Shown here: positions 11,992-46,278 of the stretch, one piece after another | Layout of the letters: each line of letters starts with the position of its first letter | How positions within the stretch are numbered: the stretch's first letter is position 1 | From: Ophelia neglecta | Lineage: Eukaryota | Assembly (NCBI GenBank): GCA_965285935.1 | Contig: OZ260661.1 | Location: forward strand, 133,672,001 to 133,736,000 | DNA: 64,000 nt | Direction: 5' to 3' | The notes under the pieces: model-generated | What the model was told of the DNA's origin: nothing | Databases searched by the model: none | Seen by the model: the letters and a program-made list of their open reading frames with translations, nothing else | Position numbers and translations under genes: made by a program

Positions 11992-14900
11992 ATGGCGGAA
12001 GGTTCACATACATTTTATGTATTCATATTACTGTATTTGTCATGGAGTATATTTGTGCCAATATCAGGTAATATATCCTCCCAATTATGACATATTCATA
12101 CTTTGTCCGAGCTACCATTTTAACATGTAATATATATATATATTGGTTAAAAAGTTTACATTGTATATCAATTTAAATTGCAATATTGTAAGACTAGTGA
12201 ATGAAAATTATATCACAGGAGCAGTTTGTGATCCAGAATGGTATCCACACAATATGAATTGTTATTATAAGTCCATCAACTTTACATCATGGATGGAAGC
12301 AAACGATATATGCAACACAATGGACTCTCATCTTGTTTCTATAACAGACCCTGAAGAAAATCAATTCATCCGAGACACATTGTGAGTAGTAGTCCACATG
12401 GCATTTTTCTAGATATTACCTTCAATTTGAAAATATATTGCTTATCAGCTACCGATCATCAATATAATGTAAAAGTACGATACCATTGTTTGAATCAATG
12501 AGAGTGTCAAATTAGCTCGCATAATTAGATAACTGAGGCCGAGGAGGATTGCAGCTACAGTCTTGGAATTTCTTGTAAGGTATGAAAACATTTGTTTGAA
12601 TTGAATATTCTTTTTATCACCAAGTTGATGTCCCAAAATAATAAAATTATTTTTACAGTCAAATAAAAAATATAAAGTAGCATGTCGTAAGTAAACATAA
12701 ATGTAATATATGTCAATAAACAAAGTCATAAAAAACAGAAGCACATACGAGGAAAAATCTAGTGTTATTAAATTTAGTGATATATTGTTGATTAACAATT
12801 GTAAGTTTGTTAATATTTAAGGAACTGAGAACTTGTATGTATACACATCCGGTTTATAACTCCCCCTCACCCCCACTCCACTACTAGTAATAAACTCCCA
12901 AATATTGCAGAGAAAGTTTTGTGTTGGAAATTTTTTTTTAGGGGGGGGGGGGGTGTATATTTGCACAGTTATTGAGTGTCGTAAATGAGCAATATACCAA
13001 GTTATATAAGTAATACATACTGCCGAGCAAAGGTAGAGGGCAGTAATTCCCGTTGCCTCGCGATAGCAAACTTTGGAGGAAAACGTTGTCTCAGTGTGAA
13101 AACGCTGACCCGTTTAAAGAGCGTGCTCAAGCGCTATTTTAATTAACCCATGCCACGCAACGTACTTATATAATACCACATTTAAAATTACCAATGAATT
13201 AGTTCAGTTTGAATGTGACATTTTAATCGATGCTGCCCGTTGCATTGGCATCGGTTTAGATATTGCCATGCGCCATTGCACTTAACACCTGATACTGCCT
13301 CTTGCCTTTGTTCTTATCATATGATATTGCTTTTAGCCTTATTTTCTAATATATAATACTGCCTTTTGCCTTTGTACTAAACTTTCTATAACACACGGCA
13401 GTGTCATGTGTACTGAAACTAGGTTAAAAATAAAAATTTGATGTTTTTTTTACTTTTCAGATTATTGGAATCTGGTATAGAAAATTAAATATGTCAAGGC
13501 TGGATATGATTCAATTCACGAATAAGGGGCGGTTTTGCTGTAGCTCAGCGCTGTTTGCCACTGAATGACTGATTTGCCCTTTCTTGACCTGTCCTATATC
13601 TTACCATTTTTCACTTATGTCGTTCAATTGATTTAACGTGTATCGAGTGTGTCCAAACTCTATCCACCTGTCTGTAGTTTTTTGTTGAAAGCATTTATCG
13701 AATTTTATTAATACAGCATCGAGTGTGATATAGCGCAAGGGTGCCACGAACAAAATCATCAGTATTGGATCGGTCTGCAGAAAAATTCTGGTGGATCAGG
13801 AAATCTTACAACTAGGCGTAGCGATTGGAAATGGCAGGATGGTTCTCAATATGGATGGTGGAATTGGAAAACAAATGGAACAATGGCTGAGCAAGAGCCA
13901 AAAGGCCGCAGTGGAAAGGCGCGAATAACATACAATGGTTATTGGGCTGATGATGATAAACTTGATAACGGACGGATCAGGTTTATTTGTGAAATGCCAG
14001 GTACGTTTTAGAGTTCACATGAATGCATCGGTTTAAGTAGTCTCAGCCTGTCGGTCAACAAACAGCTTTTATTCTCTGTTCAATTACTCTTTTAACGGTT
14101 GCTCGATTCAATGTGTGTGATTATTTGTTTCTTTCTTTTCTACTGGAATTTACCCCCCCCCCCCTTATACCGCTTTCCTTCCGAACACTTGGAACCACTA
14201 GGAGGTTATCCTTGGCCCCTATTTTGTTCGTATAATCGCGTTCTGTTTCGAGAGATTACTTTATTGGTGACATAATACCACTCACATTATAATGGGTCAA
14301 TGCAAATATTGATGGGTTATTCGATATGACCTTTGATGAAAACAAATTAGTGCATGACATTGCACATCGTCACCTATACTCTCTCTATACCAAGATTCTG
14401 TGAAAAACGTATGCCTATCAGGTTTAGAAAAATACCCGTGTTATACAAGGGGACGCATAGCTACTCGAACCAGCCTTATCGCAATAAACAGATGGTGGTT
14501 TTAAGCTTTTATATCCCTGTTGACCCATTCAATCGGACAACATTTATTATTTCATTAAATGGATAACGCCATGAACTAATATATATTAATAACTACTCTT
14601 CAATGTTTGTTTAAGGTTTTAAATGAATGTACTCCTGTCTAATAGATCGACATTTTCCACCAGATAAGTCCACTGAAACGACCGCAAATACCCAGAGCAC
14701 AACCCTGGGTACACATGACATACCTGTGACTAACAGTGGTTTGGACGAAATAACTTATTCAGGGACAAACATGAAAGATGATGCAGGTTAAATGTCTTAC
14801 ATTCATTATCATTCCACTGCCATTTAATGTTATCCCCTGTTGCTTTATTTGAATTAAATAATACCAAAACTAATCACCGGCGACATGTTGTTCAAATGTA

Positions 14901-15776
14901 TACAAATGGCTCATCGTATGTTGTTAATTCAAATTGATAATAAACAGAAGCCAACTTTAGTCGAATAGCAGACGTCAATTGCTTAATTTGTATGTCGCCA
15001 CTTCAATTGCGTTCTAATTATGCTCAATCATTCTATTAAAAGTTTTTTATTACCGTATCTGAGAAAATTGTATAATAACCATATTTATTCCAGATAACAC
15101 ATTATACATTGGCGTCGCTGTTGGATTAGTCGTTATAGTCGCTGCACTATTAACAGTAGCAATTATGGTAGTAAGGAGAATGAGGTATATTCCTGTAGAG
15201 TTAATATAATGTGTAGCTACAATTACGTCAGAACAATTTCTTCAAGCAAAAACAAAATAATTTACTAGGGATAATGCCATTGTCATATTGGAGGAAAATT
15301 AACGGCTTCCTTTATTCTGGTTAATAGCTTTGCTTTTATACGTACATATTTTGGTAAATTTTGTATTGAAAGAAAATTGCTAAATATAGTGTTACTATTT
15401 TAGGAAAAGGACTGAAGGTCAGAAAGTCCACCTATACTATAATACAAGCGGGGGCATCATCGTTCAATCAAACCGTCAAGAACCAAATGACTTTAACTGT
15501 GAAAGCGTAGAGTCCAATTATCAAAATATCATGGACGTTTCCACGATAAAAGAACCCCAATCCACTACAGGCAATCACACATACGGTAATATGCCTACGT
15601 ATGATGAGGTTTGTATAAATAAGAGAGATCAGTTGCCAGAGGATAATCACTCGCTAGGCGATATGTGTGCCGTGCCCCACAAGCAGAAAAAAACTCGTTT
15701 TCCTGGGATAGAAGTGGCACGGCTGGATCAGGATGATGGAACGACAGTGATAGACAACAGTGTCTATGGGCGGTAG
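11992..15776 (+). CDS. CTLR2: type I transmembrane C-type lectin-like receptor (~375 aa, 6 exons)
   Basis: Exons 11992-12067, 12219-12381, 13717-14000 (not in ORF track; IECDIAQGC..YWIGL..WKWQDGS..EPKG..WAD..FICEMP), 14646 (or 14664)-14786 stalk, 15094-15184 TM (LYIGVAVGLVVIVAALLTVAIMVV), 15404-15776 tail. The first three exons have the same lengths (76/163/284 nt) as in CTLR1. Confidence 0.88.
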
Positions 15777-20700: not shown

Positions 20701-21459
20701 TTCATGAAAATGTTAAAATGTTTCGATATCTACTTTATGCAGTGGTAAAGATGCTCCTTTTCTTTTCTTCATGGCTACGGCCTTGTAGTAATATGAAAAT
20801 TACTAACTCTTTCTTTATATTACAATTATATTATCACTTAAAAAACCTGCGTATCTATTTATATTCACAATATATGCTTTAATCTAATAATCTGTGTACC
20901 CTGCTCGTTATTAACCGTTATAAAAATTCACATTAAACAACACATTACTGGTTGTCAGTGTATTCAATGCACAACAATGTTATATTTGCACACTGGGCAT
21001 TTACCTAGGTACCCCCCCCCCCCTCCCCATACACCAAACAGCAAACACCTCCCCCCCCCCCACACACACACACCAATACACCCACACACCCACAGACACC
21101 CATGAATATGTGGGGTTAGAAATCTTGCATTAATCAAATGTAATGTAGCTGCTGTAATAAATTGAGATTAATCTGAGGTGTTCACGTTTATTAGTTTACA
21201 CATAACTGCCTGCCTTAAACTACCTGCCCTAAACTTGCCTTTACATTAATAACGCGGAAGTCAGTCGACGGCAAAAAATTGACCATTCACCATTTGAAAG
21301 CCACCAACACACGATGTTTACCAGAGAATGAATATATAATGGCAATATCTATATACTTAGTGGTGCAAGTAGAGTGTTGATTGTTACCGGTAGACGCGAT
21401 TTGACAAGGCGGGTCTATTCCTTGTAGGTCCTGGGAATCTTATAATCGTATATTCGATC

Positions 21460-24400
21460 ATGGCGGAACGTTCACATACATTTTATGTATTCATATTACT
21501 GTATTTGTCATGGAGTATATTTGTGCCGATATCAGGTAATATATCCTCCCAATTATGATATATTAATACTTCGTCCGAGCTACAAATATTACATGTGATA
21601 TATATCTTTGTGAAAAAGTTTACATTGTATATCAATTTACATTGCAATATTGTACGTTTAGTGAATGAAAATTATATCACAGGAGCAGTTTGTGATCCAG
21701 AATGGTATCCACACAAAATGAATTGTTATCATAAGTCCAGCAACTTTACATCATGGTGGAAAGCCAACGATATATGTAACATAATGGACTCCCATCTTGT
21801 TTCTATAACAGACCCAGAAGAAAATCAATTCATCCGAGACACATTGTGAGTAGTAGTCCACATGGCATTTTTCTATGGAAATATATTGCTTATCAGGTAC
21901 CGATTTTCAATATCATGTAAAAATGCGATACCTTGTGTGAAATCAATGAGTGTCAAATTAGCTCGCATAATTAAATAACTGGGGTGGTAGGTGGATTGCA
22001 GTTACAGACTTGGAATTTCTTGAAATGTATGAAAACATTTGTTTGAATTGAATATTCTTTATTACCAAGTTGATGTCCAAAAATAAAAATAAAATTATTT
22101 TTACGGTCAAATAAGAAAGATAAAGTAACATGTCGTAAGTAAACATAAATGTGTTTAATACATGTCAATAAACAAAGTCATAAAGGACAGAAGCAAATAC
22201 GAGGAAAAATCTAGTATTATCAATTCTAGCGATATATTGTTAAATACCTATTGTAAGTTTGTTTATAATAAGGAACTGAGAACTTGTATGTATACACATG
22301 CGGTTTATGACTCCCCCTCACCCCCACTCCACTTCTAGTAATAAACTCCCAAGTATTGCAGAGAAAGTTTTGTGTTGGAAATTTTTGTTGGGGGGATGTA
22401 TATATGCACAGTTATCGTGTGTCGTAAATGAGCAATATACCAAATATTAAAACCCCTCCCCGCCCCCTAAAAGTTCCTTATTTTAATGGGCCGGATTGCA
22501 TTACACTACAGTGTTTGAACCTACGCATTTGCACTTTGCGATTATGCTTTGATTCTGAATTAAAGACATCCTGGGAAAAGGGGGCGAATATATTGGCCTA
22601 CGGTCTGAACGGTCGGTTTTTCAGAGGCGGAATTAACATTCAGGGAGTCCATTTTAGTATCACACAAGAAATAAAAGAAGGTTCAACAGAAAGACTTCAG
22701 ATGGGCCCTTGTAAGAATGGCCCCACGAGAGGGAAGTCAAACAGTTCCAGTCTGGAGAGGTTTAAAACAAAGCTTCGGGAATGCACTGATCCAACCAAGA
22801 GTGTCATTGGATACTGCCCAGTTATTAATGCCTCACCTACAGATTTGTCCACAGTTTACACCTTGCTGAAACCGTCGGTGGAAATGGCACAAAAAGCTTG
22901 GTCAAACAAAAACCATTATAGTTTTTGACCAGGCAATCTATGCATAGGAATTAGTTATTTTGAGAAATCCTCAACAATTTTGTTCAGTCGTTTTGAGGGT
23001 TGCGGTTTCCATATAGGTCTCACGTTCCTGGCAGTTATTAGCAAACGGTTTGGCACTGCAGGATTATCAGACCTTAGGAGACAATCAGAACTTGGAAGTT
23101 TGGGATCAACCAATGGTGTTATAGTTTTTTTTATTGACCTCCGCTTTCCGGAGAGCTTAAGGTGGTACATATAACATAACGTGTTTAACATTATTAGGCA
23201 ATGAACAATATGGTAGGTGTGAGGTTACATATTCAAACGTACAGGAATATAAAATAGGATATTAATTTAGTACAACCTCGAATCAAGGAGCTGTCACATG
23301 AGTATAGTGGTCTCTTTAACCCTGCTAGTAGGCCTAGGCCTATACATTATATTTTTATAGACGAGCCATACCACCTACGGGAATACATAGAGAAGAGGGT
23401 ACCGAGAATTAGCTCTGTCCCCTTAGAACCAGAAATGACCATGGCAAGGAAAGCTAGAGTCAACATGTCGTAAGGTGCGCAGGGATCTATCGCATGGTCT
23501 CTTAGGTACTGTATGAGCGTGTCTCTGCTAGATCCTGTCTCCTGGCACACCCACAAGAGATGGGAGAGAGTGTCACCAGCTTCACCACATGTCGGACAGA
23601 CATCCCCAGTATTTGTCTGCACATGTCTCACTGTATGCTCGTAGAGGCCTGACGTCTTAGTGGTAAGGGCCATCACTATTTGTGCTCCTTTTATCTGCCT
23701 CATTGTTTTGGCGATTTTCCACATGCCTATTAGTTCATAGTCCGGACAGGAGTCTCTGAAAATATCCAGATTTTGATATGACAGGCATTCCAGTTTCCAA
23801 AGCATAGTCTGACATGTGCGAACGGTATTGCGGGTATGATTCTTCCACATCCCCTTGGACGGTGTTGTTCTTGTGTGCAGCCATGATCTAAGAGTGTCCT
23901 CCAAGCCGTACTTCACATAGGTATCTACCATGACACCTGATGTGCTCTCAATTGCTTCAATGCCGACAATGTCCCACTCGGTTAGTGCGCGAATGACCAA
24001 TGACCGGTAGATTGAGCTAGCAGGGAGAGCCAGCAGATCTCTCATTAATCTCAAGCGTCTGAGGTCAATGTAGTTTTCCACCGACCACCATCCCAGGGGA
24101 GCCAGGGCAGCAGGGTTCGCTGTGTGTCTCGGAAGACCTTGTATGCGTTTAGCTAATTGTCTGTGTTCAGTTTCAAGGCACATGATATGTTTTCTAGAGA
24201 GATGAATCACCTCTAGGCCGTACAGCATTCCAGGGACAACAATAGCCCAGTAAAGTCTGGAGAGAAGGGGTGTATTGTACCGACTCACTGCCTTGCCAAC
24301 GCCTAGCAGAGAATTCATTGATTTCTTTCCTCTATCTACGCGCTCTCTGAGGGCTGCTTGTTTCAGGCTTCCTGGTGGGCATAGAGGTACGCCGAGGTGT

Positions 24401-27400
24401 GATGTAGCTTGCTTCTGTGGGATGCTTTCACTACCCAGCATATATTGTACTGGTCTCGTTTCTTCTTTGCCGAACACCAATAATTCACACTTAGAAGCGT
24501 TAAAAGTCAGTTTCCATCTAGTGCCATACGAATAGGCCATCTTGCACAGTTCCTGCAAGGTCTTCGCATGTAGGGCTACTATTGTGATGTCATCCGCGTA
24601 GCCCGGGCAGGCGGAGTTTAGGCCGTAGGCAATAGAGCCTAGACCGCTATTCTCTATCAGTTTGAAGAGGCCGTCGTACATGTATGTGAATAGCAGCATG
24701 GAAAGGAGCCCTCCTTGGTGTAGACCTTGGCCGTGTGAATACCACTCTGATGTGCCTCCGGCCACACGAACCGCGCTCTCAAAACGGCGGTACCACGATA
24801 GGAGGATGCTCCATAGTTTCCCTCTAAATCCCAGGTTATAATTTCGGTAGAACAAACCAGAGAACCACACCGTGTCGAAGGCTTTACGAGCATCCAGCAT
24901 AGAGATATACACGGTCTGGCCCCGGGAACGGTGATATTCTATGGCCCCCCGTAAGTGCATTGTTGTATTGAGACTGGAGCAGCCCGCCTGACATGCCGCC
25001 TGCATGGGGCTCACAAGGTGCTTTCCGTCCGCCCATTTAACCATCCTTTGCATGAGCACACCCTCATACAACTTGCAAATGATGGTCAATAGAGTTATTT
25101 TACGGTAACTGTCTTTGAGCGTCGGGTTCTTTCCACCACGTTTATAAAGCGGAATGTCGATTCCCCTTCTAAAGATTACAGGCACATACTCAAGCCTAGT
25201 AATGGCTGTGAATATGAAGGTGAGGATTTCCGCCAGCTCTTTACCGCCGTGTTTGAAGTGTTCGGGAGCAATGTTATCCCACCCGCCAGCCTTACCAGTC
25301 CTTAGCCGTGTGATACAGTGGGCGACCTCATCTTCCGAGATTGGAGGTCCCAGGATGTTATCATCTTGCTGGGGAGAAAGTTGGTCATAAAGCTCGACCC
25401 TAGATTCAATTAGAGAATGAAATGACTGATCAAAGTCCTTGTTTTCCTTGGGTTGACTGAGGTCGAAGAAGTAGTCTCTCCATTCCCTGCGGATATCATC
25501 GGGGTTGGTTACTATCTGGCCACTTTCAGATTGAAGGATAGTGTTTTTGTTTTCATGCCCACTTTGGCGGCGATTATTCACAAGGCGCCAGAAAAAATTT
25601 CGGTCTACGTCGTTAGTGCGAAGGATATCCTCCTGTTCTTTTTCCTCGCTCTCGTGATCGGCGCAGCGTCTCTCTCTTCTATATAGTCGTTTGCTCTCCT
25701 CGAAGAACGCCAATACGAGCCCACAAAATGCCGATAGAAGGTATGCAGCGACTTAAATGGCACTCGATGTTTGGCTCTCTGCTCGGGAGCAACAGTATGA
25801 AATGAATACCAAGGTTGTAAATAATCTACCAGCTGATAGCTCATACATCTCTGTTCCAAAAGATGTGCAACAGGACCTACAGGTGGTACAACAAAAAGGA
25901 AATTAAATGTTTGCCAGCTTCGTTCAGCCCTGATTAGTAAATGAATGGGTCAGTTTCTTTGACAAGATTCCTGAATTGAACTCAAGAGTTTCAACGATGT
26001 CATAAAAATATAACATGTCAAGCACAACAATCAGGTTTTTATCCTCAATGTTGATCCTAGTCTATCTGCTCGGTTAGTCATTATGGCTCAAAACCGAAAA
26101 TGAACTTGAAGCCTATCATACGGACTTTGACCACTTCCGTGGTCGCTTGCAACTGTCGACGGGGGCAATCCAAAACAAACAAGGCGACATTTGAAAACTT
26201 AGATTTAATAAGTTGAATATGTTCGAACCACCGAAGTTCGGATTAATAATTACACCAAGGAATCTTTTCAATCGTTCTCCACTGATACAAACATCACAAG
26301 AAGAAACAGTACGTCGATAATCAATGCAAATACAATATATTGAGGTGTTTTAACATAGAGTTGTATTGAGTTGAGTTGTTTGGGTTTTTACGTGGCTTTC
26401 AACACTTATCGGTCATATCGCCACGGTGCCTACTTGTGACAGTGGGCTCAATGCCCTCTTTAGAGTACTGCCTCACTGGAGTACCTGCCGTAGACACTAG
26501 CCAGGGAACCCCACCCAGTCACATTATACTGTGTAGCCCAGTCCTGATACTACCCCCGAAATACCGGGCGCCTAGCAGGGGAGCTATCAGTACCTATTTT
26601 TGGGTCTAGGGTTTGGAGCGATCGAGATTTGAACCCCGATCTCCCACTTGCGAGGCGGACGCTCTTACCACTCGGCCACGCATTGGTGTCATTCAAGAAG
26701 ATTACCATGTTCTACATTCAGAGTTTCAATCAACGCATCCAAATTTTTATCAATAACAAAAACCTTTGTATTATCGGTAACAAGTACAGGAAATAAGAAC
26801 GATTATAAATTAATCATATCGTTAATATATAAAAGAAATAGTTAAGGCCCCAGAAGCGACCCAGGTAGTACACCGCAGGAAATAGGTCTGCTCTCGGAGG
26901 TAGTTTTGAGATAAGACTCATATTAGGATCAAATGATCGAATAATAACTGAGCCATGCCTGAGCAACTCCCCTTATTCTATATTTATTAACAGTGTTGAA
27001 TGGTTTCGAAAAATCTCAAAAATACCACAAGGACCATGTCTACATCCATTTGAAATTTTGTCAAGAAGAATGAAATTTTTACTGCAATTAATAAATTGGT
27101 GATTATTTAAGATCTAACAAACGGCGTGACTTCACACTGTCTCTACTACCTTATTCACTGCCGATTACCCTTAACTGTACACATTGTAAGACTGGCTATA
27201 AATTACAATGCGATGGGAAATAACGCCCTGTTAGAAGGACTTTTAGCAGAGGATAATTGTATAGACTTAAAGTCACGGGGTAAATAGAAAGTGGCGCCGG
27301 TCCATACATCTTAAAGTGGGTGACTAGGGTATATCTGAATACGTGTTTCCTTACTTATAGTATACAGGAGAAACACAATCGAGAAATCAAATAGCAATAT

Positions 27401-30400
27401 GTTGACCGTAGAAAGATAAGGCATCATTAATTTTACAATTACTTTTCAGATTTATGTTGGAGGATTTGTTATATATTATAATTTACATACGTATTTAGCT
27501 ATTAATTATCTCTAATTTTGATGAAAAACTGCCTTCGGATTTAATGATACCTAATTAATAGACCAAATTTATATTTATATTACCGGCTGGCGACCCAGAA
27601 TGGTATAAATTCAAAGCGACTTATCATACTCCCGGGATCTGATGATCATGTATGTATGTACGTATGTATGTAATTCATTTATTTTCTTGAAACAAGCCAT
27701 GACGCCAACAATAGCTAAGAGCCGTTTGGTGTTGGACGCCCTTTGCCACTACAGCCAATATAGTTTTTGATTATGTTATTACATCTATATCTATAGAAAA
27801 GTATTTTCGCACATAGCAAATGTATATAAACCAAACTGGAAATAATTTCCACAAAAAGTACTAAATTATAATCACAAAACAGAAGCTAATAATAAAATAA
27901 GTCGAACATATCAGCAAAATAAGCAAATCTATCTAGTCACAGGCAGTGCTTATTGCCTAATATGTAACCTTAAGTATATATAAAGAATATGATTACAGCA
28001 TGTATTTTCATACAGCAGACATGCATATAGGCCAATTGAAATGATAATTGTCATATTATAATACATTCATGCTTGAATCACAAACCAAAGCAAACACAAA
28101 GAAACAAACGATGGGATGATGCTAGGCAATTCCGTATCAGGGAATTCTTTCTCGCTTCTATCCGACTATTTAATACGCGAATGTTTTCTATTTCAGTATC
28201 GAGTTATGCACTGATGACAGAGCATGTCAGGAACAAACAAAGGATTTATTGATTGGGTTAATTAAAACAACAGACCTTACAGGAAATTCGTCACAACGAC
28301 GAAGTGGCTGGATGTGGGAAGATGATTCCAAATACGATTGGTTTAACTGGTATGGAGATGACTCGGTCGAGGACATGGACCGTGAACCCAAAGGTTTCAC
28401 ATGCAGAGCTGTAATGATGTACGATGGAACATGGGCTGACAAGAACCCCAAAGATTTCAAATTCATTTGTGAGAAAAAAGGTAATCTCGTAACGCCTTAT
28501 ACTTTCTTAACTTGACGCTTCTATGTTGATCGGGAGTTGCCTTGACTCAATTACACTATCCATGTGTTACCGGGAAGACAAAGTATCGTATAAGGCATCC
28601 ATACTTAGATTTGTTGGTTTCCAAACTCGTGAGGTTTTTTATTTGAGTTTCGCCGCATACGCTTATGTTGGCATGTCAACCTTTTTTCTTGTTTTAAGCA
28701 ATAGTACCCGTTATCCGAGTTGTCCAGTGGCACGCAATTTTTTTTTACAATTTGTTATAGGAATCTACATCAAATATTTTTTTATATTTCAAACCTGGAT
28801 GAAAACTATTAAGAAATACAGTTTAATCAAACAAGATGTATCTGTTCCTGTCTGCCGCTATGTCCATTGCCCTAGCAACTTCTACCGTTTCTAGTTAGTC
28901 TTAGCCGATTTAACCCATAAGTCAAAACAACTGGTTTATTTTTCATACTTTCCCAAGCTAGTCTTCTATGAAACAAGACAAATTATGGAGTCAACAGCCT
29001 TTTGGGAGAAGTATTGATTATTATTGTTGAAAGTAGTACAAAAACGATTTTAGCCCTTGAACAATACTTAGTTGATCGATTTTTATGGCGTTGGTTCAAA
29101 AACTTTTTCCGCTTAAACAACCAGGTCGGTCGGTCGGATAAAGGAAAAATAAACAGCAGTGAAAGTGCTGGTTGGGTAGGTTGGTTGGGTAGAACTTATC
29201 CACTTGCTTAACAATTAATTTTCTGTATCTTGCTAACTATGTCCCTGCATAGATGCAAATCTGTACAGTTACGTTATATATAAAACTCCGTAACTGAGAG
29301 ATTAAGGAAATGGAGCGAGACGGGATAGCGGACAGGAGACGGATAATCAATGATTTTAGCAACAATTGGAAGAAAGTAAAAGGTTTTGGGCCGACTAAGG
29401 GAAAGAAAATCATAAATTTCTTTACTGCCGTGAGAAGGTTTTGAGAAAAGGCCAAATTTATTTTTGGTTCATCCTTTGTTTAAAAAGTCGTCGGGTGAGG
29501 AAACCGTGTTTAAGAAACAAAAAATCCTATGGAGTCGTATTGTTCTTTGTTACCTGTCATCTTCCCTTCCTTTATTTGTTGTTTGGAGAGCATTGCATTA
29601 ACATTCAACGTGCACACATGTCCTTAATTCTTTCTCTTTTATTGACTTCTTGGAGCAGCCAAATATGATCTGACAGAAGCTCCTATTTCAACGAAATCGC
29701 CCTTCGACGAAGTGACAGCAACCGGACATAGGCCATCGATCACAACCTTTGGCGTATCGGACACCAACCAGGGTCCTTATAATTTTACATACACAAAGGG
29801 ACAAAATGTTTTTTTGAGTTCATGAGTCATTACCCCAATCTAGCATGTTTCTAGCGTTATTGTTGAAAGAGTATTTAAAAAGTGATCTTGTGGAAATCCA
29901 GCCAATCTAAAATCACTGTTGATGCTTGTCTTCAAGCAATTCGCCTCAAATAATAATTTGTTTACACTAAACGTATATCGGTCTAATGCATCAGCTATTA
30001 CACCTTCTTATAACTCTTTTTTCCAGACCCCTCTCTTTACATTGGCATCGCCGTGGGATTGGTATTGCTTATTGGTTTAATATTAATTACTGTAGCCACT
30101 TTGTTTAGGAGGAAAATTAGGAGGAGGTATTTTGTTTTGGATTAAATAATATCTAGTCTCAATGGTTTGTCCTATTGTCACTTTAATGACAGATGTGCGT
30201 TTGTTTTTATTTATCATGAAATTGGAATCCACCACACCCTCATAAAGAACGTAGTTCGAATTTTGCTTAAGCCCTTCTGATATTTTAGGAAAAAGGACGA
30301 GAATCAGGAACGCAACATTTATTATAATACGAGAGAAGGAATGACAGAACAAATTGGGAAGCATGAGAGAAATGTACCGAATCCCTGTAATGATTTGGAC

Positions 30401-30520
30401 ACGGTAGAATCGAATTATGAGGAACTCATTGGTGTTTCTTCAAATGGTGATGAAGCATATCCTACACAGAACAATAATCACGTATATTGTATTGTGCGTG
30501 CCCAAAATGAGCGACAATAG
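21460..30520 (+). CDS. CTLR3: chimeric C-type lectin-like receptor with truncated tail (possibly a pseudogene)
   Basis: Exons 21460-21535 and 21683-21845 (CTLR2-like); 28197-28480, ~29656 onward (stalk, splice sites unclear), 30027-30126 TM and 30289-30520 (CTLR5-like). A 14-nt deletion relative to CTLR5 gives TAG at 30518-30520; the ancestral end VENSVYGD* is still visible to 30643. WIGL is changed to LIGL. Confidence 0.7.
22450..26240 (+). mobile_element. Degenerate DNA-transposon transposase-like relic (tentatively Academ-like), interrupted by a LINE
   Basis: Fragments IGYCPVINASPTDLSTVYTLL, VFDQAIYA*, GFH..FLAVISKRFG.AGL.DL, STNGV (to ~23124) resume after the LINE as IRAHKMPIEGMQRLKW (~25712). 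Family assignment is from memory of these motifs, not from a search. Confidence 0.55.
23125..25710 (-). mobile_element. 5'-truncated LINE with uninterrupted RT ORF (23347-25713, 788 codons)
   Basis: RT motifs KAGGWDNI, YRKITLL, LDARKAFDTV, GLHQGGLLS, YADD; C-terminal CPTC-x8-H-x4-C knuckle; no endonuclease domain; 3' UTR ends in AATAAAAAAAA at ~23125-23135 on the minus strand. Confidence 0.95.
26352..26688 (-). mobile_element. tRNA-derived SINE, copy 1
   Basis: Minus-strand head has an A box (TGGCCGAGTGG) and B box (GGTTCAAATC); the body matches the copies at 46.3 and 59.1 kb; simple-repeat tail. It is absent at the paralogous position in CTLR5 intron 2 (~39940). Confidence 0.85.
26700..27100 (-). 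mobile_element. Old LINE RT fragment in CTLR3 intron 2
   Basis: Paralogous to 39950-40330; decayed F.KPF.TV and GV..GS.LG.LLFL motifs on the minus strand. Confidence 0.6.
27650..28110 (-). mobile_element. Probable 3' end of a non-LTR element inserted in CTLR3 intron 2
   Basis: Interrupts gatgatcatg|ggatgatgctaggc, which is contiguous in CTLR5 (~40870). The minus-strand end has AATAAA followed by a (CATA)n tail. Confidence 0.6.
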
Positions 30521-31699
30521 TCAAACTGTGAGTGAATTTTACGCGGTGCCCCACAAGCGTAATGGCCGATGTGAACCCGAACAGGATCGGATGAACAGGA
30601 CACCGACAGAATGCTAGTGGAGAACAGTGTGTATGGAGATTAACCTAAACATTTTTTCCGAACTGAAATATGATATTGTCATCTTGTAATAAAATACTCC
30701 ATTATTTTTAAAACTATTTTCAAAGCAAATCGCTGTATGATTTTGATAATAAATCGCTTGTTCTAATTCAACCCACTCGTGAAAAACCTTTGTCCACGCC
30801 GAATATAGTCTAGCTATATTTATAGATGGAACTGTAATTCTAATAACTGTGTTCCTATGTTCCTATGGCCCAAAATGATGCATCTTAATAACAGACGAGA
30901 AAAAGCTGCACTGCTAAGCAGCTGTTTTTAGCGATGCCATTTTTATATCGTTATATGTTCAGCCAATTTTACAAATTTCGCAATCATCGCAAAATTAACC
31001 TGTATGCAATCTCCCTAAGATGGCGCACGAACTGCCGAAAAGGGGCATTCACAACTTCGACACAATGTGCAAATTTTCAGTACAGAAATGTCAGATCGAG
31101 AAGGCCAAGTATATTGGGGCTTTTGCTATCGTGGGTTTGTGTGACACTCAGAAGTGTGTAGATATGTAGAGCCGTAGACCTATAAGTAAATACGTAACAC
31201 CAAAAGAATTTGAAATCAAGGGATGGTCTTTTTTCCAGGCACATCGATACAGGAGGGTTTGTGTCATTATTTCTTTGAAAGACACATCGAGCTCACCAAA
31301 GTGGCTTTTGACACCGCAGAAAGTATTAAACTACGTTCAAGCGTGAAAGGGTAGGCTAGTCTTGGGGCGGAACAGACGTGTTCTGGTCGCGAGTGGCCAT
31401 TCTTGGTATTTTAGGTTGCCAAAACACAAATAAAACATATCTACAAATGACTACGACCGGGAGAAACTTCGGGAACTGTCATATGGTATTTGGATTGCTA
31501 AAGGTGGACACGTTTATTACTTTTTGGCGTTTTTTTTCTCGTAGAATCTGCTCAGAACAACATTATATCACCCACTGTTACTTCTAGGACGAACAAATCC
31601 CTATTCACTGCAATACACAAGTGTGAAAGCCACCAAAGCAGTTCATTTGGGCATAATACCCTTGTCACCCTACTTGGTGGGGGAGTATAAAGACTGTTG

Positions 31700-37107: not shown

Positions 37108-38725
37108 GTAACCTCATAATTAGCTATTCAGTGTTACCATAGTGCTTTAATGCTGACCTGAGTGGCAAGTTAACAACAATCGTATCTATTGGCTAATGGA
37201 AAGACCCAATTCTGGTTTAGCAAACAAGATTTGTTTAATCGTGAAAAATCTTATGAAGAAGCAAAATTGATGAAATTGTGGTAATAATTATACACAACAA
37301 CACAGAAAGGGCCGATGATTTTTAAATATAGTGGCAAGATCAAATTCCTTGCAGAAAGCTTTTAATCTGCACGAAGAGCTTTATGTATGATCTAAACTTA
37401 GGGTAAAAAGGAACATGACCGAGGCTTATAAAACCATACTTCGCCAATGATACAAATTCGCCTATGATACAAAGTCTGTGTTGTTATGTACAGTATTTTC
37501 AACTTGTGTATTATTGCATGTATATATTTGTGTTCAAATAAATGGTTGAGTTGAAAAACTTGTATGGTGGACAATAAATTCATTGGTTAGGATATAACAT
37601 TTACTTGTAGTTTTAAATAGTAAAAGAGAAGGCATCAGAAAGATTCCTGCCCCGAATCTATAGGTAAGTTATTGGTATCTCGTATAACGTGTCACATATC
37701 TGCAATTGTGTAACAGCTTTGTCTATATAACTACATTGAAAAAGCGTAGGCATTGGTCCTCCATTATTGATGCTGGTAAGCTGTCCATGATTTATTCTAT
37801 GTATCTTATAAATCGTGAAGCGTCTGCTCAAAACATTGCCATTCGTTTCTCACAGGCGAGCTGAATGAATATGTCTATACGTTAAAATTCATGTTGTACC
37901 TTGAGCCTCAAACGGCATCCCAGACGCATACCCGCCTTACAAGTCTTATATTTGTAAACTTCTGTGGAAAGTTAATACTGTGTCCATTAGCTCGTGTAAT
38001 TTCGTCAATATATTATTATATACTGTTATTTGCGCCAATTTTAATTGATTGTAACCTACATTCACCACCAGGTGAGTGAGTTGACGGATCACGTAGGACG
38101 AACGACAACAGATGTCGCCTTTTTATGAGAAATGGGACTTTTTTCCTGCCTTTTTTAATCTCTTTCCCAGCGTGTAGTCCTAGCCGCCAGTCCAACCGTG
38201 ACGACACATACACTAACACAAGAGTGATTTATTTCCCTTTTTCCGTCTAGGGCGCAATACATCATGAACAATAATTATTCGAATTTATTGTCGATGTTGT
38301 CTAAGGTATGTTGTGTAATGTGTTCCAAGAAGGTTGCAGGTTGGACAATCTTGTAACGTAATTTGTTCACTCCAATACAAACTTGTCAAGGGCCCCATGT
38401 ATGATTTGGCGGTCTGCTGAGTTGAATATTAATAGGGTGTACTAATAAATTGAGATAAGCCTAAGGTGTTCACGCTTATTGGTTTACACATTATTTCATT
38501 CCTTAAACGCCACTGAATTTCAGTCAGCGGCCAAAATGCATAGTTCACTTGAAAGCAACAAGCACAAGATGTTAATCAGAGCATGAACATATTATAGCAA
38601 TATCTATACTCCAAGTGGTTCAGGTGAAACGTTGATTGTTACGCGGAAGCCGAGATAGACTGATTTAACACACTATTTCACTTCCTTGTATGCGCTGGAA
38701 TTCATATAGTCATGTGAAGTCTATC

Positions 38726-41700
38726 ATGGCGGAAGGTTCACACACATTTGATGTATTCGTATTACTGCATTTGTCATGGATCTTATTTGTGCCACAATCA
38801 GGTAATGTGTGCTCGGAATTACGAGCTTTCATAAATTATATCAGCCTTTATGTGGAGACCCTTACTTAATGTTTAAATTGACATTAAACTTTGCTACGTT
38901 TTGTAAATGAAAATTATATTGCAGTAGCAGTTTGTGATTCAGAATGGCATCAACATAATGGAAGTTGTTACTTCAAATCCAGTAGTATTAAATCATGGGC
39001 AGATGCAAAGTCGTCGTGCATGCATCTTGATTCCCATCTCGTATCTATCACAAGCCAAGACGAAAATATGTTCATCCGAACAACATTGTAAGTATAATTT
39101 CAGGTGACATATTTGTTCCGCTAACACATTTCAGCATTTATAAGTTAAAGTAATTACCAATTGTGGCGAAAGCCGTGAGAGCTGTGTTGTGAATTAAACT
39201 GCTGGTTGTACTGTATTGTATGTTTACATATCAAATAGTATGCATTGAAATAAATTGTATATATGATGACGTTTATTCAGGAGTGTTAAGGTTGGAATAT
39301 TCTTGATTTGAAATATAGCAGCGTCAAAATGACTAGTACTTTAGCTGCAGTAGTGTTTACTCTTAATGCATAAAAGCGCCATTTTTTATTCTCAGGATAA
39401 TGATACATTAAACCTCAACAGATATTACAGCATGTTCTTAGCATGCACATAAAACAAGTCTTAAATGTTGGTTTATACACAAACCCAATTATTTGCGCCG
39501 GGCTTCTACGTTTGGACATGCAGTATGGTATTCATAAGCAACGGTCAATTATTTATTTCGAGCCGACTTAATGGACTGTCGTTGAATTATGTTTCTACAT
39601 TGTCTTCCATTTATCTACTCCTGTTTTGTTTAAAAAACCTATACCTATACCTAGGTTAATGTCTACTAGAAGATCCATAAAATCAAAGAATAATGTAATT
39701 AAATGCTGCCATAAATTTCCCCTTGAATTTTTTAAACTTATTTTGGCAAACGGTATTAATTAAGAACGTAAGATCATATGAAATTCAACGTCCAAAGAAT
39801 TATTTATATATAATAAAAGAGTCCAAAGAATAATTATACCGAGGAATCTTTCCAATTGTTCTCAACTGATATACACATCAAAGGATATATTCCGTCGATA
39901 TTCAATGTAAACTACAATATATATTACGTTTTTTAACATAGAATCATTGAAGAAGATTAACCTTTTCTACATTAAGAGTTTCAATCAACGAATCCAAATT
40001 ATTATCATCTATAAAAACGTTTGTATCATCGGTAAACAGTACAGGAAATAAGGCCGATTATAAATTAATCATATCGTGTATATATAACAGAAATAGTAAA
40101 GGCCCCAAAATCGACCCAGGTAGTACACCGCAGAAAATAGGTCTGCTCTCGGAGGTAGTTTTGAGATATGACTCATATTAGGATCTAATGGTCGAATAAT
40201 TACTAAGCCATGCATGGGCATTCCCCTTATTCTGTAATTATTAACGGTGTCAAATGGTTTCGAGAAATCTCCAAAATACCATATTCCCATCCAGAAGAGC
40301 ATTTGAAGTTTTGTCAAGAAGTATGATATGAAATTTTTACTGCAATTAATAAATTGGTGATTATTTAAGATCCAACAAACCGCGTGCCTTCACACTGTCT
40401 CTACTACCTTATTCACTGCCGATTTCCCTTAACTATACACATTGTAAGACTGGCTATAAATTACAATGCGATGAGAAATAACGTCCTGTTAGAAGAACGA
40501 TTAGCCGAGGATGAATGGATAGACTTAATGCCCGGGTAAATAGAAAGTGGCACCGGTCCATACATTTTTAAGAAAGCGACTAGGGTATACCTGAATACGT
40601 TTTTCCTTACTTATAGTATTTAGGAGAAACACAATAGAGAGAGCAAATAGCAAAACGTTGACCGCAGGGAGATTTTTCACATTATCGTTGGATGATTTGG
40701 TGAAATGTTATAATATCATACGTTTTAGCTTTCAACATTCTTTAATTTTAAGAGAAACTGCTTGCGGTATTAACATTAACTACTAAATCAACCAAATTTA
40801 TATTTATATTATCGGCTAGCCACCTAGGATGGTATAAATACAAATCGACTTATCATACTCCCGTGAAATGATGATCATGGGATGATGCTAGGCAATTCCG
40901 TATCAGGGAATTCTTTCTCGCCTCCATCTGACTATTTTACACGCGACTTTTTTTTATTTCAGTATCAAGTTATGCACTGATAGCGGACAATGTATGGAAC
41001 AATTACAGGATTTATGGATTGGGTTAACTAAAACAAGAGGCCTTGAAGGAAATTTGTCACAACGACGAAGTGACTGGATGTGGGAAGATGGATCCAAATA
41101 CGATTGGTTTAACTGGTATGGCAATAACTCAGTCGATGACATGGACCGTGAACCCAAGGGGTTCACAGGCAAAGCTGTAATGATGTACGATGGGACGTGG
41201 GCTGACAAGAACCCCAGTAAAATCAAATTCATTTGTGAGAAAAAAGGTAATATCATAACGCCTTATGCTTTCTTATCTTGACGCTTCGATGTTAACTCAA
41301 TTACACTCTCCATATGTTTCCGGGAAGACAAAGTATCGTATAAGGCGTCCATACTTTGAATTTTTGGTTTCCAAACTAGTGAGGTCTTTATTTGAGTTTC
41401 GCCGCATACGCTTAAGTTGGTCTGTCAACCTTTCTTCTGGCTTTGGCAATAGTCCACGTTATCTGTGTTGTCCAGTGGCACGTACAGTTTTGCGCAATTT
41501 GAATATAGAAATCTAGATCAAATCAATTTTTGTATTTCCAACCTGGATAAAATCTAAGAAGAAATGTAGGTTTGTATATTGGAGGAGGCTCCTACCGGTC
41601 CGGCAACTCGTGACTGCAGCTATATTATTGAGTGGTGACTGAAAAACCTGTCTTCACATACAAGAATCTGTCTCCTACTAAGAGAAAGAACATCATAAAT

Positions 41701-42968
41701 TTCTTTACTGTCTTAAAAAGATTTTGAAAAAAGGTCAATTTATTTTTGGTTCAGCCTTTCCGCCGCATATCGACAGGTTTGTTAAAAAAAGTCGTCGGAT
41801 GAGGAAACCCTGTTTAAAATACAAAATATTCCTATGGAGTGTTATTGTTCTATGTTAACTGTCATCTTTCCTACCTTTATGTGTTGTTTCGTAGTGCATT
41901 GCATTGCATAGACATGCAGCGTGTACACATGTCTAAATTTCTTTCTCTTTTATTCTTGTAGCACACAAATTTGATTTGACGGAAGCTTCTATTTCAACAA
42001 AATCGCCCTTCGACGAAGTGACAGCTACCAGACATAGGCCATCGATCACAACCTTAGGCGTGTCGGACAACAACCATGGTCTTCATAATTCTACTTTCAC
42101 AGGGGCACAAAATATGTTTTAATTTTATAAGTCATTAGCCCTTACTAACATGTTTCTTGTGTTATTCATAAACGAGTATTTAACAAGAGATCTTGTGGAA
42201 CTCAAAGCTTACCTAAAATCACTGTTAATGCTTGTCTTCAATTCGCCACAAATAATAATCTGTTAACACCATACGTATATAGGTCTAATGTGTCAGTTAT
42301 TTCAACTTTATATAGCTCTTTTTTCCAGGCCCCTCTCTTTACATTGGCATCGCCGTGGGATTGGTATCACTTATTGCTTTAATAATAATAACTGTAGCAG
42401 CTTTGTTTTGGAGGAAAATTAGGAGGAGGTATTTTGTTTTGGATTTAACATATCTAGTCTCATTGTTTGTAACTTATTGTCCTACTGTTACTTTAATGAA
42501 AAATGTGCGTTCGATGTTTTTTGTCATAAAATCCACCGAATCCTCAGAAATAACGTAGTTGGAATTTTGTTTAAACACATCTGATGTTTCAGGGAAAAAA
42601 ACGAGGATCAGGAACGCAACATTTATTATAATACGAGAGAAGGAATGGCAGTAGACATTGGGAAGCATGAGACAAATGAACCGAATGCCTGTAATGATTT
42701 GGACACAATAGAAACGAATTGTCAGGATGTCATTGGTGTTTTTGCAAATGGCGAAGAAACACATCCTAGCAATACACAGAGCAATAATCACGCTAATAGT
42801 ATTGTGAGTAAGGACCCGGGACCCAAAATGAGCGACAATAGTCTAACTGTGCGTGACATTTACGCGGTGCCCCACAGGTATAATGACCGATATGAAACCG
42901 AACAAATTGTACCGGATGAACTGGACAACGACACAACGCTGGTGGAGAACAGTGTGTATGGAGATTAA
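38726..42968 (+). CDS. CTLR5: type I transmembrane C-type lectin-like receptor
   Basis: Exons 38726-38801, 38925-39087, 40963-41246, stalk from 41962 (donor unclear), 42329-42428 TM (LYIGIAVGLVSLIALIIITVAALFW), 42593-42968 tail. Open and in frame (332 aa) if the stalk exon is skipped. Confidence 0.82.
39950..40330 (-). mobile_element. Old LINE RT fragment in CTLR5 intron 2
   Basis: ORF 40069-40317 contains DFSKPFDTVN; neighbouring frames give GS.LGPLLFL.YI.D-like text. Confidence 0.65.
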
Positions 42969-45900: not shown

Positions 45901-46278
45901 GAATACAGAAGAATTGGAGGTTTTGTCATTCCTTGTTTAATCCTTGTTTATTTTCTAGCGGTTTCACCACGTGCGCTTTTCAAGACATTACATTTTTGAA
46001 TTGTCCAAGACAATGCTTACTTGTATAAACTAGTAATTTTTAAATATTGCAAGAGGTTTTCTTGCCAGTGATTATAACATTATGTGGGTCCTTTTGTAAT
46101 ATTGCCTACTGTGAAACCTCATAAAACAATTTACCTTTTTGTAATATTTCGTGATATTTCGTAATGAATCGTTAAGAAACACAGACTAAGCGGTTCTAAT
46201 ATTTGGGGGTCATGTTAGCGTTTGTGTTAAGAGAAGAGACTGAACTCAAGCTTGTAAAGATCAGTAATAAAATTGGAC

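What the first reader, a model, noticed from the sequence alone, without database searches (positions are those of the whole stretch)
21460..30643. CTLR3 is a chimera whose lectin domain is half CTLR2-type and half CTLR5-type
Seen: ~20800-22445 (upstream region, exons 1-2, start of intron 2) matches CTLR2 ~10820-13005, while ~26245-30650 (rest of intron 2, exons 3-6) matches CTLR5 ~39830-42975. The switch lies under a transposon block (22450-26240). The intron splitting the CTLD is phase 2 in all paralogues, so the hybrid stays in frame. Inference: half-domain shuffling through intron 2 can create new specificity, promoter and tail combinations.
Basis: partly seen in the sequence, partly recalled or inferred. 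Interest (0 to 1): 0.8.

Follow-up and report, generated by a model that had tools for sequence, protein, structure and literature searches.

The report
Old hybrid lectin receptor gene lineage
CTLR3 really is a hybrid C-type lectin receptor gene, with its front part from one paralogue type and its back part from another. The join is old and lies in unique intron DNA rather than under the transposon. It is shared by three gene copies in a tandem cluster that recombines repeatedly, so this is a well-mapped example of a known process rather than a new one.

Summary
The two-part similarity is real. The CTLR3 5' region (20798-22443) matches CTLR2 at 82-85% nt. Its 3' region (26245-30651) matches CTLR5 at 81-84%. 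Segment trees disagree significantly (AU p=0.0014 and p=3.8e-6). Every copy has a phase-2 intron splitting the lectin domain, about 1/3 to 2/3 rather than half and half.

CTLR3 was not made from CTLR2 and CTLR5 themselves. A sister cluster 400 kb upstream holds two more genes with the same hybrid architecture and the same junction. One lacks the LINE, so the hybrid predates the duplication of the five-gene block.

Only about 23125-25706 of the "transposon block" is a transposon, a later LINE insertion. Its flanks occur nowhere else in the genome and belong to the CTLR2-type intron. The true junction lies within 26049-26188. There, unique intron sequence abuts an internally truncated dispersed repeat that CTLR5-type genes carry in longer form. 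That makes the hybrid the derived form and points to non-homologous recombination.

There are further exchanges (tails, intron 3). Exon 3 is far more diverged than its introns.

No RNA data exist, so expression and function are untested. CTLR3 alone has lost the conserved Trp of the WIGL motif. This is a new member of a known kind, of moderate interest.

The parts
20798..21459 (+). Upstream region of CTLR3 shared with X-type genes (CTLR2 10817-11015 and 11559-)
   Evidence: blastn
21460..21535 (+). CTLR3 exon 1 (signal peptide), X-type. It is 96% aa identical to CTLR2 and 72% to CTLR5
21683..21845 (+). CTLR3 exon 2, the N-terminal third of the CTLD (Pfam Lectin_C positions 4-34 of 107), X-type. 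It ends in phase 2
21846..22443 (+). Intron 2, the part still alignable with CTLR2 (12380-13000, 86%)
22444..23124 (+). U1: single-locus intron sequence, not a repeat. It is present in the three hybrid genes and in the X-type pseudogene B6. X-type B2 keeps its first ~50 nt
23125..25706 (-). LINE fragment (788-aa ORF at 23347-25713 with RVT_1). A later insertion shared only with paralogue B7, with empty sites in B3 and B6
25707..26187 (+). U2: single-locus intron sequence. Its first 338 nt are also in the X-type pseudogene B6
26049..26188 (.). Interval that holds the X-type/Z-type recombination junction. Similarity to Z-type genes starts sharply at about 26188. The junction is identical in all three hybrid copies
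26188..26359 (+). Internally truncated copy of dispersed repeat R (continues at 26689-27000). Z-type genes B4 and B9 carry about 300 bp more of R on the 5' side
26360..26688 (+). Very abundant SINE-like element. It is present in all three hybrid genes and absent from Z-type genes, so it was inserted after the hybrid formed
26689..28196 (+). Intron 2, Z-type part (76-93% to CTLR5, B4 and B9; 90-97% to B3)
28197..28480 (+). CTLR3 exon 3, the C-terminal two-thirds of the CTLD including the binding loop, Z-type. It has LIGL instead of WIGL and an extra Cys. It is 87% identical to B7 although the flanking introns are 93-98% identical
28600..28760 (.). Second change of nearest relative, in intron 3. 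Upstream the nearest relative other than B7 is the hybrid B3. Downstream it is the Z-type gene B4 (92-97%)
29656..29817 (+). CTLR3 exon 4 (stalk). An alternative acceptor lies at 29659
30027..30126 (+). CTLR3 exon 5 (transmembrane segment)
30289..30520 (+). CTLR3 exon 6 (cytoplasmic tail, short 'alpha' form with SNYEEL). The stop codon is at 30518-30520
10817..15740 (+). CTLR2, the X-type representative. Codon-aligned hits: exon 1 from 11992, exon 2 at 12221-12379, exon 3 from 13717, TM exon 15093-15185, tail from 15402. A dispersed repeat T2 at 13017-13380 follows the end of similarity to CTLR3
38443..42976 (+). CTLR5, the Z-type representative. Codon-aligned hits: exon 1 from 38726, exon 2 at 38927-39085, exon 3 at 40964-41245, exons 4-6 from 41961, 42331 and 42591. 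Similarity to CTLR3 starts at 39829

Best explanation
CTLR3 is one of three surviving copies of an old hybrid ('Y-type') lineage of type-I C-type lectin receptor genes.

One recombination event inside intron 2 produced the hybrid. It joined about 2.8 kb of a CTLR2-type (X) gene to the 3' part of a CTLR5-type (Z) gene. The X part runs from about 660 bp upstream of the ATG through exons 1-2 and about 1.8 kb of intron 2, including the unique stretches U1 and U2. The Z part starts in the middle of a dispersed repeat R that sat in the Z intron.

All paralogues have a phase-2 intron at this point, so the product stays in frame. Its N-terminal third of the CTLD is X-type. The ligand-binding two-thirds, stalk, TM and tail are Z-type.

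The junction joins unique intron DNA to the inside of a repeat. Neither end of the X-derived segment lies in sequence shared by X and Z. The event was therefore most likely illegitimate (non-homologous) recombination or a template switch, not an exchange guided by homology (inferred).

Later events, in order:
- A SINE inserted at 26360-26688.
- The five-gene block (A-X-Y-A-Z) was duplicated at least twice.
- A LINE inserted in the ancestor of CTLR3 and B7.
- CTLR2 lost U1/U2 by deletion.
- Y and Z genes exchanged their 3' parts again (tails alpha and beta, switch near 28650).

Shown: the mosaic, the junction interval, the order of insertions and the three copies. Inferred: the mechanism, the polarity and any function.
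For: (1) Mosaic similarity that includes introns.

(2) Tree tests. In the 5' segment X+Y form a clade at 100/100 and Y+Z is rejected (AU p=0.0014). For exons 3+5+6, X lies outside Y+Z+A (97/98) and X+Y is rejected (p=3.8e-6).

(3) Genome-wide exon searches find exactly six X-type exon 2 copies and six Z-type exon 3 copies. Three genes carry both: CTLR3, B3 and B7. Their sequence across 26049-26245 is the same.

(4) B3 and B6 show the empty LINE site. B7 is collinear with CTLR3 at 96.9% over 6.9 kb, including the LINE.

(5) U1 and U2 have only 4 genomic copies. B6 is X-type by position and by its 3' exons, and it is continuous across 22443. B2 keeps 15+22 exact nt of the start of U1. In CTLR2 a dispersed repeat follows the end of similarity within 17 bp.

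(6) Copies of repeat R elsewhere in the genome are collinear through the junction point. B4 and B9 carry R from about position 200, whereas Y genes carry it only from about position 501.

(7) Logan contigs bridge 22443/22444, the LINE/U2 edge and 26188 without mismatch.

(8) All splice sites are GT-AG and the ORF is open.
Against: - There are no RNA data, so it is unknown whether any hybrid copy is spliced as predicted or expressed.
- The only DNA runs are k-mer contigs from what is probably the assembly's own sample. They are not independent, and none spans the whole intron.
- B6 could itself be a later Y/X recombinant. In that case U1/U2 need not be X-derived, and only the short B2 remnant would support that origin.
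- The X-type sequence that once followed U2 is not preserved, so homology or microhomology at the junction cannot be examined.
- Exon 3 alone does not significantly reject X+Y (AU p=0.076).
- The gene order X-Y-(A)-Z with a 5'X/3'Z hybrid is not what a single unequal exchange between one X and one Z leaves behind. Extra steps must be assumed.
- No relatives outside this genome were found, so the event cannot be dated by comparison with other species.
Confidence: 0.75

Rival explanations
1. A duplicate Z gene had its 5' part overwritten by X, or a duplicate X gene had its 3' part overwritten by Z. The process would be homology-driven gene conversion or unequal crossing-over (NAHR) in the tandem array.
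For: The cluster clearly undergoes homology-driven exchange. Tails alpha and beta are swapped between Y and Z genes. A tract of about 4 kb is 99-100% identical between CTLR3 and B7. X and Y copies are intermixed in the 5' tree, and Y and Z copies in the exon 3 tree. This model would also explain why the hybrid sits between X and Z.
Against: The right end of the X-derived segment abuts the inside of repeat R, and no R copy is present in any X intron. The left end (about -660) lies beyond the region where X and Z align, which begins at about -300. No relic X exon 3 or Z exons 1-2 lie near any Y gene.
Confidence: 0.13
2. Reversed polarity: the Y architecture is ancestral, and the X and Z types each arose from it by acquiring a foreign half.
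For: Y is the only type that shares each half with another type, so a pattern of shared halves alone cannot give the direction.
Against: This needs two events and two donors that are not seen anywhere in the genome. Z genes carry the longer copy of repeat R and Y the truncated one, and a longer copy cannot derive from a truncated one.
Confidence: 0.05
3. One reading: a recent chimera formed directly between CTLR2 and CTLR5 of this window, with the breakpoint hidden in or caused by the transposon block.
For: Within the window alone, CTLR2 and CTLR5 are the best matches of the two parts.
Against: Closer relatives of both parts exist in the sister cluster: B7 at 97-99%, B3 at 88-97% and B4 at 92-97%. 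The same junction is present in three copies. The LINE is absent from B3. Identity to CTLR2 and CTLR5 is only 81-86%.
Confidence: 0.03
4. Assembly artefact: the two halves of CTLR3 were misjoined inside the repeat.
For: The CTLR3-B7 tract of 99-100% identity and the multi-copy LINE are places where assemblers can err. No listed contig spans the whole stretch laid (21700-27699).
Against: The hybrid architecture recurs three times. One copy is B3, where the X part, U1/U2 and the Z part are contiguous within 3 kb without the LINE. Contigs built from reads bridge each unique boundary with 0-1 mismatches. The whole five-gene block is collinear with B5-B9.
Confidence: 0.03
5. No recombination took place. 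One gene lineage diverged unevenly, fast in one half of X and fast in the other half of Z.
For: Exon 3 does evolve unusually fast.
Against: Intron similarity starts and stops abruptly, and introns are not under such selection. The truncated repeat marks a physical breakpoint.
Confidence: 0.01

Closest known systems
Hybrid genes in tandem immune-receptor clusters, e.g. KIR hybrid genes (Traherne et al. 2010, PMC2816608; title and abstract seen)
   Same: Tandem paralogous receptor genes. A new gene combines the 5' part of one paralogue with the 3' part of another, the breakpoint lies in non-coding DNA, and the result is a new pairing of ligand-binding and signalling parts. Whole blocks also vary in copy number.
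   Different: KIR hybrids arise by homologous misalignment of very similar genes and swap whole Ig domains. Here the junction joins unique intron DNA to the inside of a repeat, with no homology seen. The exchange cuts through a single lectin domain. The hybrid is fixed as an old lineage with three copies in this one assembly, not seen as a haplotype variant.
Lepore / anti-Lepore type fusion genes (globins, glycophorins, opsins). Named from general knowledge, not tested here
   Same: 5' part of the upstream paralogue type fused in frame to the 3' part of the downstream type.
   Different: A Lepore fusion deletes both parents and what lies between them. Here both parental types still flank the hybrid, so a single unequal exchange cannot be the whole story.
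Exon shuffling by illegitimate recombination in introns of matching phase (classical model, general knowledge)
   Same: The junction is in an intron, the phases match (phase 2 in all copies), and the junction appears non-homologous.
   Different: Classical shuffling moves whole domains between unrelated genes, typically through phase 1-1 introns. Here parts of one domain are exchanged between paralogues through a phase-2 intron inside the domain.
Chimeric C-type lectin RNAs in the prawn Macrobrachium nipponense (PMC12541431)
   Same: Invertebrate C-type lectins whose diversity is increased by combining parts of two genes.
   Different: The prawn chimeras are made at RNA level (trans-splicing, transcriptional slippage). 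Here the chimera is written into the genome and inherited.

Membership tests
C-type lectin-like domain (Pfam PF00059 Lectin_C) | Profile match above the curated cut-off | tested here: met
   CTLR3 exon 2 scores 25.2 bits against a cut-off of 22.6, at profile positions 4-34. CTLR3 exon 3 alone gives no hit. Its paralogue CTLR1 exon 3 (54% identical) scores 24.9 bits at positions 33-107, and CTLR2 exon 3 scores 17.2 bits. The joined domain was not submitted.
C-type lectin-like domain (Pfam PF00059 Lectin_C) | Conserved WIGL motif | tested here: not met
   CTLR3 has LIGL. The other 11 cluster copies of exon 3 have WIGL, as do three more distant paralogues used as outgroups. This is a CTLR3-specific change and a possible sign of relaxed constraint.
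Ca2+-dependent sugar-binding CTLD | EPN or QPD tripeptide and WND motif (consensus from general knowledge) | tested here: not met
   By inspection, CTLR3 reads EPK and WAD at the corresponding places. Ligand class is therefore open.
Hybrid gene by recombination between paralogues | Two contiguous segments with different nearest paralogue types, supported statistically | tested here: met
   AU tests give p=0.0014 (5' segment) and p=3.8e-6 (3' exons). Intron-level similarity supports the same split.
Hybrid gene by recombination between paralogues | Reading frame kept across the junction | tested here: met
   Phase 2 in all 14 copies. The in-silico ORF is 337-338 codons with GT-AG at all five introns.
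Hybrid gene by recombination between paralogues | Hybrid transcript exists | not testable with these tools
   No RNA run holds the stretch. The junction 21845|28197 spans 6.35 kb, more than the 6,000 letters allowed for laying reads.
NAHR / gene conversion product | Shared homology between the two parents at the ends of the exchanged tract | tested here: not met
   The right end is unique U2 against the inside of repeat R, and there is no R copy in X introns. The left end at about -660 lies outside the region where X and Z align. The ancestral X sequence beyond U2 is not preserved, so this is not final.
Lepore-type deletion fusion | Parental genes and the interval between them are lost | tested here: not met
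   X-type and Z-type genes flank the hybrid in all three blocks.
Type-I membrane receptor with ITIM-like tail | Signal peptide, one TM segment, and a tyrosine motif (S/I/V/L)xYxx(I/V/L) in the tail | tested here: inconclusive
   Seen by inspection only: a hydrophobic N-terminus, a TM-like stretch IGIAVGLVLLIGLILITVATL followed by RRKIRRR, and SNYEEL in the tail. No predictor was run, and the consensus is from general knowledge.

The most novel reading that the evidence does not exclude
The cluster may work as a germline cassette system. Three modules are re-paired repeatedly through introns 2 and 3: the promoter, signal peptide and N-terminal CTLD third; the ligand-binding two-thirds; and the stalk, TM and tail. 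Meanwhile exon 3 itself would be diversified faster than its own introns by a targeted process (hypermutation or patchy conversion from many donors). In the youngest pair, exon 3 is 12.7% diverged against 2-7% in the flanking introns, with both synonymous and non-synonymous changes raised.
Probability: 0.12. Interest if true: 0.7.

Novelty: new member of a known kind. Interest (0 to 1): 0.35.

Why it matters
This is a cleanly mapped case in which part of a lectin domain, not a whole domain, was exchanged between paralogues through an intron inside the domain. The product was then kept intact through later block duplications.

The truncated repeat at the junction gives the direction of the event, which is rarely recoverable for old hybrids.

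The case also suggests a direct experiment. Exon 3 carries all the expected binding-site loops, so the hybrid should bind like the CTLR5 type while being regulated like the CTLR2 type.

For genome annotation, it warns that similarity within one window can name the wrong parents, and that a repeat lying near a switch need not be its cause.

Tried and rejected
- RNA evidence: the one run search returned only three DNA contig sets from one sample and no RNA. The exon 2-exon 3 junction could therefore not be tested. It is also too wide (6.35 kb) for the 6,000-letter limit on laying reads.
- Relatives in other organisms: a full HMMER search with exon 3 gave only 7 weak hits, the best at E=1e-7. No cross-species dating was possible. 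The Atlas look-alike search gave only a lead (perlucin-like, Mollusca). The organism was not identified.
- Exon-only trees: exon 2 alone is too short to resolve. The distant outgroup O3 gave a long-branch problem and was dropped. Exon 3 alone did not reject X+Y (p=0.076), but adding exons 5 and 6 did.
- Pfam on CTLR3 exon 3 or CTLR5 exon 3 alone gave no hit even at E<=5.
- The 'transposon block' as one element: no terminal repeats or target-site duplication were found, and the flanks proved to be unique sequence.
- A MITE spanning the left boundary, suggested by a 15-nt inverted repeat, was rejected. The stretch has only 5 genomic matches, all in this family.
- Relic exons of the replaced halves near hybrid genes: none found.
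- Similarity of U1/U2 to Z-type or A-type introns: none.
- Positive selection on exon 3: dN/dS is 0.45-1.9, and dS is raised too, so selection alone does not explain the excess divergence.
Exons were searched one by one by reference, so there is no full-length homology search or structure model.
- Earlier scan notes gave nothing for this place.
Full report
**What was checked first.**
- CTLR2 10817-11015 and 11559-13000 match CTLR3 20798-21005 and 20983-22443 at 82-85%.
- CTLR3 26245-26359, 26689-27650, 28111-28817 and 29391-30651 match CTLR5 39829-39942, 39944-40879, 40877-41565 and 41674-42976 at 81-84%.

All E-values are effectively zero. Both CTLR2 and CTLR5 are complete genes with their own, much more distant, other halves. 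CTLR3 exon 2 is 89% identical in protein to CTLR2 but 57% to CTLR5. Exon 3 is 75% identical to CTLR5 but 39% to CTLR2.

**Gene model.** CTLR3 reads as six exons: 21460-21535, 21683-21845, 28197-28480, 29656-29817, 30027-30126 and 30289-30520. All introns are GT-AG and the frame is open for 337-338 codons.
- Pfam places exon 2 on Lectin_C profile positions 4-34 of 107. The paralogous exon 3 falls on positions 33-107.
- The intron therefore cuts the domain about one third of the way in. All expected binding loops are encoded by exon 3.
- All 14 family copies examined have the same phase-2 junction, TT|gt...ag|N.
- The joined protein was never sent to a search or folding tool. Exons were searched separately by reference, so there is no full-length search or structure model.

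**The family is larger than the window.** Searching the whole assembly with exon 2 and exon 3 found a sister cluster 400 kb upstream on the same contig. I fetched it as 100 kb, here called B.

I call the gene types as follows: A is CTLR1/4-like, X is CTLR2-like, Y is CTLR3-like and Z is CTLR5-like.
- The window reads A X Y A Z.
- The sister cluster reads A X Y Z, then A X Y A Z (genes B1 to B9).
- The X-type exon 2 occurs six times in the genome and the Z-type exon 3 six times.
- Three genes carry both: CTLR3, B3 and B7.

The window's block is collinear with B5-B9 over its whole length at about 88-97%. So the hybrid architecture is a gene type that existed before the blocks were copied. CTLR2 and CTLR5 are only local representatives of the two parental types. 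Closer relatives of each part of CTLR3 are B7 (97-99% in the 5' half), B3 (90-97% in intron 2) and B4 (92-97% from intron 3 onward).

**Incongruence test.**
- For the 5' segment (150 bp upstream through exon 2), X and Y copies form one clade with 100/100 support. Forcing Y with Z is rejected (AU p=0.0014).
- For exon 3 alone, X falls outside Y+Z+A, but forcing X with Y is not quite rejected (p=0.076).
- With exons 3, 5 and 6 together it is rejected (p=3.8e-6).
- Independently of trees, Y and Z align through 2-4 kb of introns while X does not align there at all. The reverse holds in the 5' part.

**The 'transposon block' is three things.**
- A 788-codon minus-strand ORF with a reverse-transcriptase domain marks a LINE fragment at about 23125-25706.
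- B3 and B6 show the empty site: the sequence left of 23124 runs directly into the sequence right of 25707. The LINE is therefore a later insertion, shared only with B7.
- The flanks U1 (22444-23124) and U2 (25707-26187) are not repeats. Each has four copies in the 762-Mb assembly, all inside this family: CTLR3, B7, B3 and B6. A probe across the left boundary (22230-22520) has five matches, all in the family as well.

**Where the switch really is.** The end of similarity to CTLR2 at 22443 is peculiar to CTLR2.
- B6 is the X-type gene of its block by position and by its TM and tail exons. It runs straight across that point and carries U1 and the first 338 nt of U2.
- B2, the other X gene, keeps exact 15-nt and 22-nt pieces of the start of U1 just where its own similarity ends. 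It shares an indel state there with B6.
- In CTLR2 a dispersed repeat with more than 60 genomic matches begins 17 bp after the boundary.

The simplest reading is that U1/U2 belonged to the ancestral X intron and that CTLR2 and B2 lost it by separate deletions.

On the other side, similarity to Z genes begins sharply at about 26188. That point is the inside of a dispersed repeat, R.
- Six copies of R fetched from other chromosomes are collinear with each other for 800-1000 bp straight through it.
- The Z genes B4 and B9 carry R from about 300 bp further upstream.
- All three Y genes carry it only from that point.

The junction therefore lies within 26049-26188, is the same in all three Y genes, and truncates a repeat that is longer in Z. 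A longer copy cannot descend from a truncated one, so the 3' part of Y came from a Z-type gene and Y is the derived form.

**Mechanism (inferred).** The right end of the X-derived segment joins unique intron DNA to the middle of R, and no X intron holds an R copy. The left end, about 660 bp upstream of the ATG, lies outside the roughly 300 bp upstream where X and Z still align. No relic of the replaced exons lies near any Y gene.

This fits illegitimate recombination or a replication template switch better than crossing-over or conversion guided by homology. The original X sequence beyond U2 is lost, however, so microhomology cannot be examined.

A 5'X/3'Z hybrid sitting between X and Z is the 'Lepore' polarity. 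A single unequal exchange between one X and one Z would delete both parents. Either earlier duplications or a copy-and-paste type event must be assumed.

**Order of later events.**
1. The SINE at 26360-26688 is in all Y genes and in no Z gene, so it came after the hybrid and before the block duplications.
2. The LINE came later still.
3. CTLR3 and B7 are 99.2-99.8% identical from 21846 to 25710 but only 94.6% upstream and 87-98% downstream. This looks like recent homogenisation.
4. In intron 3 (about 28650) the nearest relative of CTLR3, other than B7, changes from the hybrid B3 to the Z gene B4.
5. The cytoplasmic tail comes in a short form (CTLR3, B7, B4) and a long form (CTLR5, B3, B9) that cut across the Y/Z division.

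The cluster is reticulate, and the intron-2 event is only the oldest and clearest exchange.

**Is the assembly right?** Only three contig sets from one sample, probably the source of the assembly, hold the stretch.
- Contigs laid on 21700-27699 bridge the X-like/U1 boundary (22270-22564, no mismatch), the LINE/U2 edge (25671-25912) and the U2/R junction (26162-26399 and 26067-26425).
- The LINE has 3-5 times the depth of its flanks.
- None of the contigs listed spans the whole stretch, and the data are not independent of the assembly.
- The stronger argument is that the same architecture is assembled three times, once (B3) within 3 kb and without the LINE.

**Is it functional?** This is unknown.
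- All three Y and all three Z genes keep open frames despite about 10% divergence. In the same cluster CTLR4 has an in-frame TGA in exon 3, and B6 and B8 have lost exon 3. That suggests the frames are being maintained.
- dN/dS over the coding sequence is 0.59-0.72 between Y copies and about 1.0 between Z copies, with intervals that include 1.
- CTLR3 alone has Leu for the Trp of the WIGL motif and an extra Cys, so this copy may be impaired.
- Exon 3 is 87.3% identical between CTLR3 and B7, while the introns on either side are 97.7% and 93.1% identical (Fisher p=3e-7).
- The 36 differences split into 11 unique to CTLR3, 13 unique to B7 and 12 where both states occur in other copies. Synonymous changes are raised too. 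Selection alone does not explain this, and patchy conversion or a local mutational bias remain open.

**Comparison with what is known.** The closest parallels are hybrid genes in tandem immune-receptor clusters such as KIR (PMC2816608, seen) and the classical Lepore-type fusions. The prawn C-type lectin chimeras are made at RNA level (PMC12541431).

The present case differs in three ways: it cuts through a single lectin domain, its junction appears non-homologous, and it is an old lineage with three copies.

**Verdict.** It is an ancient type-level event with a junction in unique intron DNA beside a truncated repeat. It was not a recent CTLR2 x CTLR5 exchange under a transposon. It is a new member of a known kind, and functional claims await RNA and binding data.

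Noticed in passing
window 36975-36977 (CTLR4 exon 3); cluster B genes B6 (L053) and B8 (L056): CTLR4 has an in-frame TGA in exon 3. B6 and B8 have exons 1-2 but no detectable exon 3, so several cluster members are pseudogenes.
   Followed up: partly
window 28197-28480 versus G000:C1:133307809-133308092 (B7 exon 3): In the youngest gene pair, exon 3 is 12.7% diverged while the flanking introns are 2.3% and 6.9% diverged. Synonymous and non-synonymous changes are both raised, and one third of the differing sites show states shared with other paralogues.
   Followed up: partly
window 21846-25710 versus cluster B 71604-75469: A tract of about 4 kb, 99.2-99.8% identical, lies between CTLR3 and B7, which are 392 kb apart. 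It is flanked by clearly lower identity. This suggests recent conversion or a very recent shared history for this segment only.
   Followed up: partly
window ~28650 and 29087-29618: The nearest relative changes again in intron 3, from B3 to the Z-type gene B4. A 532-bp stretch is present in CTLR3, B3, B9 and CTLR5 but absent from B7 and B4.
   Followed up: partly
window 30289-30620 and 42591-42950: The short tail of CTLR3, B7 and B4 looks like a frameshift-truncated form of the long tail of CTLR5, B3 and B9. The lost part is still readable in another frame (…PKMSDNSQTV..YAVPH). The tails carry ITIM/ITSM-like tyrosine motifs (SNYEEL, TNYQDV; SNYQNI in the X type).
   Followed up: partly
window 26360-26688, 46278-46474, 59098-59389: A SINE-like element with word depth above 100,000 in the read-derived contigs, so it is extremely abundant in this genome.
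   Followed up: no
window 13017-13380: A dispersed repeat (T2) with internal tandem sub-repeats and more than 60 matches across the genome. It sits where CTLR2 loses similarity to CTLR3.
   Followed up: partly
window 10603-10774, 12592-12749, 22044-22201: A short element of about 160 bp is present upstream of CTLR2. Inverted copies lie in intron 2 of CTLR2 and CTLR3. A contig skipping 21985-22145 suggests a copy or allele without it.
   Followed up: no
window 814-3526: The left flank of the window's cluster is 98.3% identical to the left flank of the sister cluster (G000:C1:133230001-133232708). This is much higher than the genes themselves (about 90%).
   Followed up: no
window 47968-48364, 55492-55683, 61876-62710: Tandem and dispersed repeats downstream of the lectin cluster, not examined further.
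   Followed up: no
window 22428-22928 (+): A 166-codon ORF runs across the left boundary into U1. It has no Pfam match and is probably spurious.
   Followed up: partly
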